DNA of 64,000 bases, from NCBI RefSeq assembly GCF_040938485.1, contig NW_027271166.1, positions 1-64,000 of the forward strand, given 5' to 3'. The notes beneath the pieces are model-generated. The model saw only the letters and a list, made by a program, of their open reading frames with translations. It searched no databases and had not been told where the DNA came from. Shown here in pieces: positions 1 through 5,110 of the stretch (position 1 is the stretch's first letter; every line of letters begins with the position of its first letter). The stretch comes from Diadema antillarum. Lineage: Eukaryota. The position numbers and the translations under genes were made by a program.

Positions 1-2033
1 GCAACGCGCAAAGATTTTGCCGCGTCGTTTCATAACTTTTTTCATTGAAGTCTCCCAAATATTTTGAGACCAAATTTGCGACGTCCGGGTACTTCGTTCT
101 GACGTTACGTAATGTTTTGCATATGCATGTCAACCCGAAAACGGCTCTAATTCATGATGTTGTGTGCAAATCCAATGCAAATTGTGTTTTTTTGTTAAAT
201 TGACATAAATTAGATTACCGTAAAGTTCCATGTATAAGACGCACTATTTTTTCGTCGGAAAACGTTGAAAATCGGGGGTGCATCGTATACACGGGTACAG
301 TCGAATCACGGAAAAAAATCCGTCATGTACACCCAATTTTATAAGGCCAACTTGGGGCTATGTATGCCCATCGACAATTGGAAGGTAAGCAATCACTAAA
401 ACTTACGGATAAATGAGCGATCTTTCAATCTGGACACACACAAAAGCTGCAAATACGAGATAAACTTACATCGGCCTTGTGCAGTAACGATGTATCAATC
501 TGGCCATAGACAACAGCTGTAACAGCACTGCTGTATGCTACCGATGTCAGTCTACCAAGCTACCAACAGCCAACCTAGTAGCTGGAATACGCGATGTACA
601 GGTACCATTTAATACTAAATTACCGATACCGTAAAACTTATCAATGTACCGGTACTAGTATCAATATGGCCATAGACAAAAGCTGTAAAATACGGAGTAG
701 GATCGACGCTATGTCACCGTCAATGTGAACGATGTGTGAAGCATGCATGCATATCCATGTCGTTCGTTTGCTCTTCATTTCACGAGGCCACCTAGGATAG
801 CTAGCTAGCTAGCTAGCAAGCCTTTGGCAAAGGCAGCAGCTGCAGAGAGGCTTTTGCAATGGACTCGCGTGCACACAGCGATCGGATCGAAGCGCGCTTG
901 CCCATTGCGCGCTGTGTGTGCAAGTCCATTGCTCTCTGTGTGCGTGTGCTGAAATTATCGCGAGCTGCCTTTTGCAAAAGGCTAGCACTGTGCATAAAAG
1001 CATGGTACAATGTACAAGAGACACACATGTTACTGGTAATCCCTCCGGGCGAAACAACAGTGAGTGTAATTACCGTACGCACCGTACATCTTGCCGTATG
1101 ATCCCTCTGCTACACTTGTTGATGTTTTTCTTATTTTTCGTAATGAACCTTCCAGTCTGACATGCGTCAATATGCGAGACACCCTCTGCTACCACAGCAA
1201 AGATCGTACTGTACACTCATGAGTACGATATGCATGACACATGTACCACGATTGAAAGGCGAAACAATACTGTAGCAAGTGAGTACCGAGACAAGTCGCG
1301 CATTTTGCGTCTTCCATACATGTATTTTGCCGATGTCCGTTGAATACCGTTAAAAGAAAGTATAAAAGGAAACGAAAAATAGAGCAAATACATGCTGCAT
1401 TCTAGGGAAATTTTGAGCCGAAATAATGTGTATTTTACACACGCAATATCTGCGTGGAAATTTTCGTGTGTTTTTTTTTTTTTTTATTGTAGGTCCGAAA
1501 GTAGGGGTGCGTCTTATACACGGGTGCGTCTTATACACGGAACTTTACGGTACTTCAACTTTAAATCATTGAAATTAATAAATTCTGATGTAAATAAGCT
1601 TGAAAGAGTGCCTGCAATAAATCTTGGGAAAAAAACAATAGAAAACAAAAGGTTGAAAAAACAATGAAATAAATAAGAAATTAACAAAACAATAAAAAAC
1701 AAGAGAAATTGATTTTGATTGTGCTATTTTTTTACAAGAAAATTGTTTAATGTGTCTTGAGGAATTCTGACACAAAAATTTAGAAATCCTTCTGTCTTTT
1801 TAATGGAGTTACGGGGGAGATTATGATTTCAAACATAAATTTGCATAATTAATTTACTAAAAATAGAAAATCAATATTTTTGGATGATTGTGCAATCTTG
1901 TAGTTGACATCTGGCTCTATCTTCAGGCAAAATTTTGCGGCAATCGCGCCATCAGTGGCCGAGATCTGAAGGGGGGGTCAAATTGACCCCCCTCAGTAAA
2001 AACTTGGTCTCAAATGGCCCAGTTAGAATATGG
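1..2033. mobile_element. Right part of a TTAA-ended (piggyBac-like) non-autonomous element, interrupted by the element at 218-1550
   Basis: Ends ...CCCAGTTAGAATATGG|TTAA (TTAA at 2034-2037), so the terminus reads TTAA-CC on the minus strand. The left end is outside the window, so the TIR pair cannot be confirmed. Confidence 0.4.
218..1550. mobile_element. Tc1/mariner-pogo-type non-autonomous DNA transposon
   Basis: TA at 216-217 and 1551-1552. TIR CCGTAAAGTTCC(A/G)TGTATAAGACGCAC, 27 bp with 1 mismatch. Subterminal GTGCGTCTTATACACGG duplicated at the right end. No transposase ORF. Confidence 0.85.
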
Positions 2034-2037
2034 TTAA

Positions 2038-4556
2038 GGGCCATTCTCAGATTAAGTGTTCAATTCCATGTGAGTAAAACCGAAAAATCAACCACAAAGT
2101 AATACATTCAAAGATGTGTTTTCGGAAACTTCAAAACCGGTCAAATACGAAACAAAAAGTGGAACATTCTAAATGATGGCCATTCATTGAGTAAAAATGA
2201 ATTGAAATAGAGCATCATATATGATTTTTGATCACCAATCAGATACGTTACCGTAAATTTACATGTTGTAATGGACTCCTAACTCTGAATTAAATCTATT
2301 GTTTTGATCCAATTTCTGTTCAGGAAAGGACATTCTGTCCCCCCTAAAGATATTGGGGTTTTTCAAGAGGTAAAGATGTTGTCATCCCTTGCTAATTGGT
2401 AGAAATTATTTCTGTGTGGTAGGTTGAAATATGCTTTTTGCTGAAATGAAATATAACCTTAAGATTCACTTTGTATTTTTAGCAAATTTCGCTTACAAAT
2501 AAAGTTTCGAATCCCACAAATCATGCAAAGGGAACGATCCGATCTGGAATTTCCACAGGAAACAAATATGAATTGCTTTCCTGGGGAAATAACTATTGAA
2601 AAACATCGAATCACCTTTGGTAACGTATCTGGTAAAATATAAGTAATAATTTTAGTTGTGTATGAATTAATAAATATCACCTGCTTAATTATTTACCTCA
2701 TGAATTGATGTAAAAATGAATGATGTAAGCCCAAATTAACCATTTTAAACATTGTACGTAATATTTAAACTATGAAATGCAGTGGAAAAGAGCCCTAAAT
2801 GTGAAAGCTGAGTTCTTCATTCACAGAATATTCTCATCTTACGTCTGAATGTATTTATCCATCTGACTATAAATATTCATTAAGTTTTGATGGATAATGC
2901 AAACAAGGTTTAAAAAATATATTTTTGCAGGCACTTAGAAGGAAGTAGGTACAGTCTCTATGAACTCGATATGCTAAACAGTTGTTTGACCTATGGTAAC
3001 GTATTTGGCTCATCCCTTTTAATGAAAATGAATAAATAATTATTCAACTTATCAATGAATCTTGAGTAGTTCTTCATATGTTGAAAAACACTAGAATAAA
3101 TATGCAACAGAACACTGAAACTTTTCTCGGAAGCGTTTCATAAACTACTTTTTACTCTTTCAAAGTTTGGTAACGTATCTGGCGTACCATAAATGAATCT
3201 GTCGGTGAAGTTACAGAGCAATTTCTACTGAATATTCTTCATTTGAACATAACTTTAATTTTTTATGGAAGCGTCATTCTATGCAGAATTGTTTTATGAA
3301 CACTTTGTTTTACATAACATTATTTGTCACCGTGGGTGCCCTGAATTATACGTAACGTATCTGCTAAATCTTAAAAGCAAAAAACTGATATGCTGAATCT
3401 TAGCTTCGTCTTGTAAAATAAACGTTCAAAGTTGTTGCATAGAATATGAAAGTGGCTGGGTTTTATAGATTAGAACTTTGGAGTTTATTAGCACACAACG
3501 ATTTGTTTGTAAAAACATTTACAATTTCTTTTCAGCATTTTGATTATGTGGTAACGTATCTGTCGGAAAACTTGGCATTAAGTTGTGAGACACTGACGTC
3601 GAAAGAAAAATCATGTGGAAGTGTTGCTCTTTTTCACCTCTCTGTCCTTTTGGTGTAAGAATATAATCCTGAGGTCCAACAAAACGAAGCATGTAATGTG
3701 TAGGGATGAATTTTGACCAGATTTGATCCCCAGAAAGCACAAGACCAATGAGCAAAATTCGGTCACGTATCTGGGGTAACGTATCTGTGGTAACGTATAT
3801 GGTCGATCATATTATTATGAGAGCGATATCTACCAAATATTTCTCACTTGTACTAAACTTTAATGTTGAATCGATGCGTCATTCCGAGGAGTAATGTATA
3901 ATATACCATTTGTCTGACATTGCAATATCTGTCGCAGTGGGTGGCGTGAAAAGTATGTAACGTATCTGTCCAAATAAAAGTGTAGAAAACCGATATTTCA
4001 AACATTGTACCGTATTCTCAATAAAGAGCTGTTGCACAAAAAATCTAAGTACTTGCAATGTATGAAGTATATCCTCAGGGTTTCATATACACAGGGGCAT
4101 TGCATAGTCTTGTTATTTTCTCAATGCTGTAACACTAAAGAAACTGGTAACGTATCTGGCGGTGAACTTGGCGACAGGTTTCAAAAGGCTATAAAAAAGA
4201 AGTCAATAAAAATTTTGGAACTTTTTGAGTACTGTGATTAGCACATATGATATGCTCATCGTCCATGAAAATGATATTTGGAAAGTGTGTTTGTGGACGG
4301 AGAGGAGCAATGAAACATAATTCTGAAATAGCCGGCGACACTGCGTTTTGGGGGTCTTAACGAAGTTTAACAGCAAAATTTTATACAAAAAGGCAGACAA
4401 CCGCATTTGATCGTGTTTATTTTTAACAAATAAAGTCCTCGTGATATATTATAAACATTTAAATAGTATCTAATAGGTTTCAGGGAACCGCAACCTGTCA
4501 TGGAATGTCGGCAACACCAAAATTCCGTATTTGAACGCTTTTACTGAGAATGGGCC
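2038..4556. mobile_element. 2.5-kb TTAA-flanked non-autonomous element (Kolobok-like RR..YY termini) with an internal 13-mer array
   Basis: TTAA at 2034-2037 and 4557-4560. Imperfect TIR GGGCCATTCTCAGATTAAGTGTTCAA vs GGCCCATTCTCAGTAAAAGCGTTCAA (right end, reverse complement). No coding capacity seen. Confidence 0.75.
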
Positions 4557-5110
4557 TTAAAAGAGAGACCGACAGAGTTATTTCATTCTGCACTGCAGAG
4601 GACAAAAGTACCACGCAGCTCTCAATTCAGTAGGGCTTTACAGCCACCAAAATCAAGGTGATTGAATTTTCATGCGTCACTTAATCAAGAAATACCCTTA
4701 CCAAGAATGCTGTGGAATACTAGAACAAGCACGTGTGCCATTAAAATCAAGTTGAGGTCTTTCAGCGCGACTTGCCAAGCCTCAAACATTCATAATATCA
4801 GTATATCGCTAGTGTTCCTAAGCAATATGAACTTTGACCGGCAAAACAAAACAAAAAATATATAAATATTTTTATGTACTTACTTTGTGCACTATAAACT
4901 GTCTGTAGAATGTGAGGCATGTTGCGTAGGACCTGGTCCCACTTATGCTGGTCAGGACAAGGGAGTGAAACTTTTCCTCCCTCACAGCTTTGCTTACCAT
5001 GGCATCGCCTGCAGAAATATTGTTATAAATATGATCAGATCAAAATCAGAATGGCTGAATTTTCAATATTATATGGGTATCCTGTAAAACTGACAAAAGT
5101 TCAAATAGCA

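What the first reader, a model, noticed from the sequence alone, without database searches (positions are those of the whole stretch)
2240..4158. 13-mer GGTAACGTATCTG repeated 11 times on a ~190-bp lattice with unrelated spacers inside a TTAA element
Seen: exact copies at 2240 (minus strand), 2619, 3169, 3550, 3775 and 4146; one-mismatch copies at 2995, 3351, 3761, 3789 and 3956 (3761/3775/3789 form a 14-bp-period triplet). Successive spacings are 379, 376, 174, 182, 199, 211, 14, 14, 167 and 190, i.e. about one or two times 190 apart from the triplet. The spacers are not recognisably similar beyond a partial extension (ATCTG(G/T)CGG..AA.TT). I did not find the motif outside the element 2038-4556. 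This repeat-spacer architecture differs from the usual subterminal clustering of transposase sites. Inference: phased binding sites at nucleosome-repeat spacing (transposase or a host factor), or an old satellite in which only a protein-bound core was retained.
Basis: partly seen in the sequence, partly recalled or inferred. Interest (0 to 1): 0.7.

Follow-up and report, generated by a model that had tools for sequence, protein, structure and literature searches.

The report
Conserved binding-site array in a Sola-like transposon
The repeated 13-letter word is real and marks a young, roughly 400-copy non-autonomous DNA transposon; it is not a TTAA/piggyBac element, and the word is most likely the docking site for the family's own Sola-like transposase, a known kind of feature spread unusually widely and regularly.

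Summary
There are 11 copies of GGTAACGTATCTG (at most 1 mismatch) at the stated places. They lie on a ~193-bp lattice that 13 of 5000 random placements match.

The element 2038-4556 is a real 2519-bp transposon, here called family A. It has at least 40 copies at 98-100% identity and about 360 candidates.

It is not a TTAA element. Other copies carry variable AT-rich 4-bp duplications such as ATAT, TTAT and ATGT.

Two further families in the genome share the first 11 TIR letters and the same 12-mer core, GTAACGTATCTG. These are family B (~3.2 kb) and family C (more than 6 kb long form).
- Between families the right arms are only 46-54% identical.
- The 12-mer is nevertheless invariant at collinear sites.
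- Its spacing is kept: 167/166/167, 190/192/192, and 410/411/413 to the end.

The long C form carries a frameshifted DDD, RNase H-like transposase. It has no Pfam match, and its motif blocks resemble a published Sola2 transposase by eye.

Family A looks like the two arms of such an element joined without the gene, plus one duplicated two-site block.

Best reading: these are cis sites selected for mobilisation, probably bound by the transposase. Nucleosome phasing is untested.

The spacers are mostly unrelated to each other; only one pair aligns.

Word look-ups in the scan's notes found no earlier record of this motif.

The parts
2034..2037 (.). Left target-site duplication (TTAA in this copy only)
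   Evidence: 18 of 20 copies have a perfect 4-bp duplication of varying sequence (ATAT, TTAT, ATGT, ATAC, TATA, AAGT and others). TTAA occurs only in this copy.
2038..2050 (+). Left terminal inverted repeat GGGCCATTCTCAG
   Evidence: (I1). The first 11 letters are shared with families B and C.
2240..2252 (-). Left-arm motif copy, inverted relative to the array (exact)
   Evidence: An inverted copy lies 379-389 bp before the first direct copy in family A, in the C1 copy (family C) and in the C15 copy (family B).
2619..2631 (+). Motif copy (exact)
2995..3007 (+). Motif copy (1 mismatch, GGTAACGTATTTG)
3169..3181 (+). Motif copy (exact). It starts the two-site block 3169-3550, a diverged duplicate of 3789-4146.
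   Evidence: (D2)
3351..3363 (+). Motif copy (first letter differs; 12-mer core exact)
3550..3562 (+). Motif copy (exact)
3761..3802 (+). Triplet of motif copies with 14-bp period (3761, 3775, 3789)
   Evidence: A collinear triplet occurs in family C and a 24-bp-spaced pair in family B.
3956..3968 (+). Motif copy (12-mer core exact), 167 bp after the triplet's last member
   Evidence: The orthologous site lies at 166 bp in family C and 167 bp in family B.
4146..4158 (+). Last motif copy (exact), 190 bp after the previous one and 410 bp from the right end
   Evidence: The orthologous spacings are 192/192 and 411/413 in families C and B.
4168..4177 (+). First of three GGCGACA-type islands in the right-terminal 410 bp. 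The others are near 4333-4341 and 4507-4517.
   Evidence: These islands are conserved in all three families.
4544..4556 (-). Right terminal inverted repeat (CTGAGAATGGGCC on the + strand)
4557..4560 (.). Right target-site duplication (TTAA)

Best explanation
The stretch 2038-4556 is one copy of a young, high-copy, non-coding cut-and-paste DNA transposon (family A, 2519 bp). It has a 13-bp TIR and a variable AT-rich 4-bp TSD. It belongs to a lineage whose gene-bearing member (family C long form) encodes a Sola-like DDD transposase. The 12-mer GTAACGTATCTG is a cis-acting site of that lineage. It lies in both arms: inverted in the left arm near the end, and direct in the rest. It is kept by selection for mobilisation, most likely because the transposase binds it. 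An N-terminal DNA-binding part of the protein is inferred as the binder, or else a partner protein. Many spaced sites would load several transposase molecules on each arm and help pair the two ends. Sites were multiplied by duplication of ~190/380-bp blocks, and only the bound core was then retained. Family A is essentially the left and right arms joined without the gene, plus one duplicated two-site block, which makes the sites look like one continuous lattice. Shown: the element, its TSD and its copies; motif and spacing conservation across three diverged families; and a broken RNase H-like transposase gene in the long form. Inferred: who binds the site, and that binding promotes transposition.
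For: - Mobile element: at least 40 full-length copies at 98-100% identity and 363 candidates. Copies have distinct flanks and 4-bp TSDs. The genome holds 2373 exact 13-mers against 36 for the reversed control.
- Sister families: families B and C share the first 11 TIR letters and the motif.
- Right arms: they are 46-54% identical between families, yet the 12-mer is invariant at three collinear sites. The distances are 167/166/167, 190/192/192 and 410/411/413. BLAST between A and B or C finds almost nothing but the motif cluster and the terminus.
- Drift within families: among 20 family A copies, variant cells make up 0.11% of motif positions against 0.98% elsewhere. Among 7 family B copies the figures are 3.4% against 10.7%.
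- Transposase: the long form at C120 carries overlapping open frames with MDFxENY, WTDSPTSQYRN and FFESGHGKxxCDG blocks. They have 51 unnamed eukaryotic homologues. The model has an RNase H-like fold whose best PDB matches are integrase cores. The blocks are collinear by eye with Sola2_DFa-2.
- TSD: Sola1 and Sola2 elements make AT-rich 4-bp TSDs (AWWT) (PMC3845634; PMC3627910).
- Precedent: Hermes subterminal repeats are bound by BED domains, with end requirements reaching far beyond the TIR (PMC10368747). Lemi1 binds the subterminal motifs of the Emigrant MITE (PMC1636448, abstract).
Against: - No binding data exist.
- The nearest 12-mer lies 203 bp from the left tip and 410 bp from the right tip. 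Known transposase sites usually crowd toward the tips.
- The tip-proximal DNA holds other conserved islands (GGCGACA), which could be the true transposase sites.
- No intact transposase of the motif-bearing lineage was found. The copies at C120 (two) and C247 are broken, and the next relative is only 62% identical. Yet family A copies are up to 100% identical.
- No DNA-binding domain could be named in the N-terminal open frame.
- Sola assignment rests on TSD type and a by-eye block comparison.
Confidence: 0.62

Rival explanations
1. The sites bind a host factor, or position nucleosomes. On this reading the 12-mers sit at about one per nucleosome repeat, so the element carries a phased chromatin array. 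The array might favour access by the transposase or protect the element from silencing.
For: The spacing is regular: about 193 bp in family A, 202 bp in B and 186 bp in C. The distances 167 and 190-192 bp are kept within a few bp across families despite saturated spacer divergence. Subfamilies of B that are only 16% apart already differ by 4 bp. The sites lie far from the tips.
Against: No chromatin data were available. The left-arm spacings are about 380-400 bp, with 14-, 21- and 24-bp clusters that do not fit one site per nucleosome. From general knowledge, sea-urchin nucleosome repeats are longer (about 210-240 bp). Equal lengths may simply be inherited from duplicated blocks.
Confidence: 0.15
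2. The sites are regulatory elements of the transposase gene, such as promoter, enhancer or autoregulatory operators. Deletion derivatives merely inherited them.
For: In the long form an inverted pair and the triplet lie within about 1-1.4 kb upstream of the start of the reverse-oriented gene.
Against: Families A and B have no gene, yet keep the sites invariant while everything else drifted. Non-autonomous elements are selected only for being mobilised.
Confidence: 0.1
3. This is an ordinary decayed ~190/380-bp internal satellite, and the identical cores are a by-product of recent duplication or gene conversion with no function.
For: One two-site block, 3169-3550, is a diverged duplicate of 3789-4146. 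The flanks alternate between two types. Internal tandem repeats are common in non-autonomous transposons.
Against: TRF finds no long-period array, and most spacer pairs show no similarity. Conversion tracts would not be limited to the same 12 bp at every site in three families that are about 50% diverged. Variants avoid the motif within families.
Confidence: 0.05

Closest known systems
Sola superfamily of DNA transposons (Sola1/Sola2/Sola3; Bao et al. 2009, as cited in PMC4455052 and PMC3845634)
   Same: AT-rich 4-bp TSD. Short TIR starting GG(G/A)CC; Sola1 MITEs start GGACCG. The transposase has no Pfam match, as PMC5751038 states for Sola. Its D/D/D blocks are collinear by eye with Sola2_DFa-2.
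   Different: The subgroup is not determined, and no formal alignment to a reference Sola transposase was run.
Subterminal repeats of hAT elements (Hermes STRs bound by BED domains; Ac/Ds, Tol2 and Tag1 end requirements), PMC10368747
   Same: A short oriented motif is repeated many times in both arms, asymmetrically between the ends. It is needed beyond the TIR and is recognised by an N-terminal DNA-binding domain of an oligomeric transposase.
   Different: Hermes sites are 4-5 bp and concentrate within tens of bp of the tips. Here a 12-mer is spread over about 1.2 kb per arm at roughly 170-400-bp steps and is absent from the terminal 200-400 bp.
Subterminal repeated motifs of the Emigrant MITE bound by Lemi1 proteins (PMC1636448); En/Spm TnpA 12-bp motifs (general knowledge)
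   Same: A non-autonomous derivative keeps the repeated motifs recognised by the proteins of the autonomous partner.
   Different: A different superfamily, and a much wider and more regular spacing here.
piggyBac superfamily
   Same: The TSD is 4 bp long, and this one copy happens to sit in TTAA.
   Different: The TSD sequence varies between copies. Thirty loci of the two commonest piggyBac families in this genome lack the TIR and the motif. The partner transposase is not PF13843.

Membership tests
piggyBac superfamily | Insertion at, and duplication of, TTAA | tested here: not met
   of 20 copies only the window copy has TTAA. The others have ATAT (5 perfect copies), TTAT, ATGT, ATAC, TATA, AAGT, TTCT, TCAT, ATGA, TTCA, TACT and TTTT.
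piggyBac superfamily | Autonomous partner with a DDE_Tnp_1_7 (PF13843) transposase and the same ends | tested here: not met
   30 loci of the 613-aa and 620-aa piggyBac families hold neither the TIR nor the motif. Rarer piggyBac families could not be fetched. The motif-bearing long element encodes a different protein.
Sola superfamily | 4-bp, AT-rich TSD (AWWT-like) | tested here: met
   18 of 20 copies have perfect 4-bp TSDs, mostly A/T-rich and often ATAT.
Sola superfamily | DDD transposase homologous to reference Sola transposases | tested here: inconclusive
   Five collinear blocks match Sola2_DFa-2 by eye (MDF-x-EN; EE-x-Q; SD-x-L-x-H; W-S/T-D; HGK-x3-D). No formal alignment was run, because the reference sequence has no tool reference. 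There is no Pfam hit, as expected for Sola.
Sola superfamily | RNase H-like catalytic fold | tested here: met
   The AF2 model has pLDDT 70.6. The top Foldseek PDB hits are retroviral integrase cores, terminase nucleases and RNase H (E 2e-4 to 5e-3, TM 0.3-0.48). Support is moderate, and the fold is not specific to Sola.
Subterminal transposase-binding repeat arrays | Same short motif repeated in both arms, with opposite orientation at the two ends | tested here: met
   one inverted copy lies about 200 bp from the left tip, and direct copies run towards the right end.
Subterminal transposase-binding repeat arrays | Motif shared by the autonomous element and its non-autonomous relatives, and conserved above background | tested here: met
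Subterminal transposase-binding repeat arrays | Motif is bound by the transposase and needed for transposition | not testable with these tools
   This needs EMSA or footprinting and a transposition assay.
Satellite / tandem repeat | Units align head to tail along their length | tested here: not met
   TRF finds only the 14-bp triplet. Of all spacer pairs in family A, only 3169-3350 against 3789-3955 is clearly similar (z 24), and 3351-3549 against 3956-4145 weakly (z 4.4).
Nucleosome-phased site array | Sites coincide with phased linkers or dyads in chromatin | not testable with these tools
   Only contigs of DNA-type runs were available. There were no MNase or ATAC data.

The most novel reading that the evidence does not exclude
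The ~167-192-bp distances between sites are themselves under selection. On this reading the element builds a phased nucleosome array, or a transposase filament or loop ladder, with one site per repeat. The Sola-like transposase would then recognise a chromatin-scale structure rather than naked ends. That would be a new way for a eukaryotic transposon to mark its arms.
Probability: 0.08. Interest if true: 0.75.

Novelty: new member of a known kind. Interest (0 to 1): 0.33.

Why it matters
In the papers read here, nothing is reported about which DNA sites Sola transposases need beyond their short TIRs. This lineage offers a clean candidate site. It is a 12-mer kept invariant in three families that have otherwise diverged to saturation. 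A recently active ~400-copy substrate is available, and the distances between sites are conserved. That makes a binding and transposition test straightforward. The finding also corrects the superfamily call from TTAA/piggyBac to Sola-like, which matters for repeat annotation of this sea-urchin genome.

Tried and rejected
- **piggyBac partner.** A PF13843 search found 116 matches. Thirty loci of the two main families have no TIR or motif. Rejected.
- **Exact TTAA+TIR pattern.** Only 4 genome hits, which led to the variable-TSD result.
- **Pfam on all transposase open frames.** Nothing found.
- **PDB sequence profile search.** Nothing found.
- **ESM Atlas.** The catalytic part returned only unnamed or DUF7869-like clusters. 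The N-terminal part returned nothing informative.
- **Bao et al. 2009 paper.** Not held in the library.
- **'DUF7869' in papers.** No hits.
- **Rfam over 1500-5100.** No match at E up to 1, so the units are not known RNA genes.
- **Helical (10.5-bp) phasing.** Absent.
- **Docking-site/selector reading.** I considered a mutually exclusive splicing layout, with one inverted copy plus many direct copies. Rejected, because the unit is a non-coding mobile element present in hundreds of copies.
- **Public runs.** Only contigs were available, so no starts, strands or chromatin information could be read. An 'RNA?' run holds a few low-depth pieces that may be DNA.
- **Formal alignment to the published Sola2 transposase.** Left out, because that sequence has no tool reference and long letters are not to be typed.

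Full report
**1. The observation**

The window holds 11 copies of GGTAACGTATCTG with at most one mismatch, at exactly the stated places. The only other hit is a 2-mismatch match at 38299. The count of 12 hits with at most 2 mismatches compares with 0.83 expected, and 0 of 100 shuffles reached it. Tandem Repeats Finder reports only the 14-bp triplet at 3761-3802. With the triplet counted once, the eight direct sites fit a lattice of about 193 bp. The Rayleigh R is 0.90, and 13 of 5000 random placements reach it. There is no 10.5-bp helical phase. The invariant core is the 12-mer GTAACGTATCTG.

**2. The element**

The stretch 2038-4556 is bounded by a perfect 13-bp inverted repeat, GGGCCATTCTCAG. 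The genome is 1.75 Gb in 2963 contigs. It holds at least 40 full-length copies at 98-100% identity among 363 candidates. It also holds 2373 exact 13-mers, against 36 for the reversed control.

Aligning the ends of 20 copies shows a 4-bp target-site duplication of variable, AT-rich sequence: ATAT, TTAT, ATGT, ATAC, TATA and others. TTAA occurs only in the window copy. The 'TTAA element' label is therefore a coincidence. Thirty loci of the two commonest piggyBac families lack both the TIR and the motif. The element has no long ORF and no Rfam match. I call it family A.

**3. Relatives**

Pattern searches for closely spaced motif pairs found two further families.
- Family B is about 3.2 kb and has a 24-bp-spaced pair. 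At least 36 copies were found (loci L051-L058).
- Family C has a 21-bp-spaced inverted pair. At least 17 copies were found (loci L059-L064).

Both end in GGGCCATTCTC, the first 11 letters of the family A TIR.

BLAST between A and B or C finds only the motif cluster and the last ~55 bp. A global alignment of the right arms (~770 bp) gives 46-54% identity between families. Even so, the 12-mer is invariant at three collinear sites, and the distances are kept:

| Interval | Family A | Family C | Family B |
|---|---|---|---|
| Last clustered site to next site | 167 | 166 | 167 |
| Next site to last site | 190 | 192 | 192 |
| Last site to the tip | 410 | 411 | 413 |

One family B subfamily (L052), 16% diverged from the others, has the first two intervals each 4 bp longer (171 and 196).

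Other conserved islands are three GGCGACA-type words in the last 410 bp, and the tip itself.

Spacer similarity between families is detectable only in two places. It is clear in the terminal unit (z 8.6-18.7) and faint at orthologous units.

Within families, variants avoid the motif. In 20 family A copies, variant cells make up 0.11% of motif positions against 0.98% elsewhere. In 7 family B copies the figures are 3.4% against 10.7%.

Among the consensus differences seen in contigs of two coded organisms, none of those listed falls inside a motif copy. That alone is not significant.

**4. The gene-bearing form**

Walking inward from a family C copy on contig C120 gave a 6-kb stretch. Its interior is present only three times in the genome. 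It carries overlapping open frames of 338, 177, 210 and 104 codons on one strand. These contain the blocks MDF-x-ENY, WTDSPTSQYRN and FFESGHGK-x-x-CDGIGG.

This copy is broken by frameshifts, and so are its twin and the C247 copy. The next relative in the genome is 62% identical, with a 946-codon open frame at C406. A distant family (32% identical) with an 864-codon frame has more than 40 copies.

The evidence on the protein's identity is as follows.
- Pfam finds nothing.
- The word search finds 51 unnamed eukaryotic homologues at up to 57% identity (alignment A1).
- A PDB sequence profile search finds nothing.
- An AlphaFold model (pLDDT 70.6) matches retroviral integrase cores, terminase nucleases and RNase H. 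The scores are E 2e-4 to 5e-3 and TM 0.3-0.48. This is an RNase H-like nuclease fold.
- A published Sola2 transposase (Sola2_DFa-2, supplementary file 3 of PMC3627910) shows the same five blocks in the same order by eye.
- Sola1 and Sola2 elements make AT-rich 4-bp TSDs (AWWT/AWDT), and Sola1 MITEs begin GGACCG.
- PMC5751038 notes that Sola transposases have no Pfam model.

I therefore file the lineage as Sola-like. The formal homology test remains open.

**5. Anatomy of the arms**

Coordinates of exact motifs and the match of the C120 inner left segment to C1:1509046-1509444 show the layout of family C.
- The left arm has an inverted site, then direct sites at +389, +379 and +176.
- The gene follows, on the opposite strand.
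- Next come an inverted pair, the triplet, two more sites and the tip.

Family A has the same left-arm steps (379, 376, 174) and the same right arm (triplet, 167, 190, 410). Between them, 3169-3550 is a diverged duplicate of the right-arm block 3789-4146 (z 24 and 4.4).

Family A is thus the two arms without the gene, plus one duplicated two-site block. That is why the sites look like one continuous lattice. This part therefore rests on coordinates only.

**6. Mechanism**

Non-autonomous elements are selected only for being moved. A 12-mer that stays invariant in three families while the rest reaches saturation is therefore a cis requirement of mobilisation. The commonest such requirement is binding by the transposase.

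Precedents exist. Hermes subterminal repeats are bound by BED domains, and several hAT elements need 150-200 bp or more of each end (PMC10368747). Lemi1 proteins bind the subterminal motifs of the Emigrant MITE (PMC1636448, abstract seen).

Several points argue against a simple reading.
- The sites are absent from the terminal 200-400 bp, where GGCGACA islands are conserved instead.
- The spacing is wide and regular, and is kept within a few bp between families.
- No intact cognate transposase was seen, although family A copies are up to 100% identical.

The sites may act like an internal enhancer of synapsis rather than as tip-recognition sites. A host factor or a nucleosome-scale arrangement cannot be excluded.

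**7. Comparison and novelty**

This is a known kind of thing: a TIR transposon with repeated cis sites shared between autonomous and non-autonomous members. It sits in a superfamily for which the papers read here describe no such sites, and the layout is unusually wide and regular.

Earlier notes of this scan call the genome the sea urchin Diadema antillarum and report Sola elements in it. I did not verify the species. An 'echinoderm metagenome' run does hold parts of the element. Word look-ups in the scan's notes did not turn up this motif.

**8. Verdict**

The superfamily label is wrong. The binding-site reading is supported by comparative evidence, and nucleosome phasing is untested. Interest is moderate to low.

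Noticed in passing
window 4168-4177, 4333-4341, 4507-4517: A second repeated word, (T/C)GGCGACA(C), occurs three times in the right-terminal 410 bp. It is conserved at collinear places in families A, B and C, and may be the tip-proximal recognition site.
   Followed up: partly
window 1621-2037: The DNA just left of the element is itself a repeat about ten times more abundant than family A in the contigs of public runs. It includes a G7/C7 palindrome near 1963-1990. The family A copy lies at or inside its edge.
   Followed up: no
G000 C406:502383-502901; many loci with an 864-codon frame, e.g. C278:1312185-1312637 on the window's own contig: The genome holds several Sola-like transposase families with long open frames. 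One has a 946-codon frame and is 62% identical to the motif lineage. Another has an 864-codon frame and more than 40 copies.
   Followed up: no
L022-L050 (e.g. G000 C640:1281385-1282503): At least two piggyBac families have intact 613-aa and 620-aa open frames. The 620-aa family has more than 30 near-identical copies, so it looks recently active. They are unrelated to this element.
   Followed up: no
window 3419-3619: One contig of run X15 (organism B) skips exactly 199 bp here. That equals the length of the lattice step 3351-3550, so it may be a unit-loss variant. It is a single contig and the evidence is weak.
   Followed up: no
L059-L064, C120 stretch (inverted pair at L059:1501-1534): Family C has an extra inverted pair of the motif with 21-bp spacing, about 370 bp before the triplet. 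In the long form it lies upstream of the start of the reverse-oriented transposase gene, so it could act as an operator.
   Followed up: no
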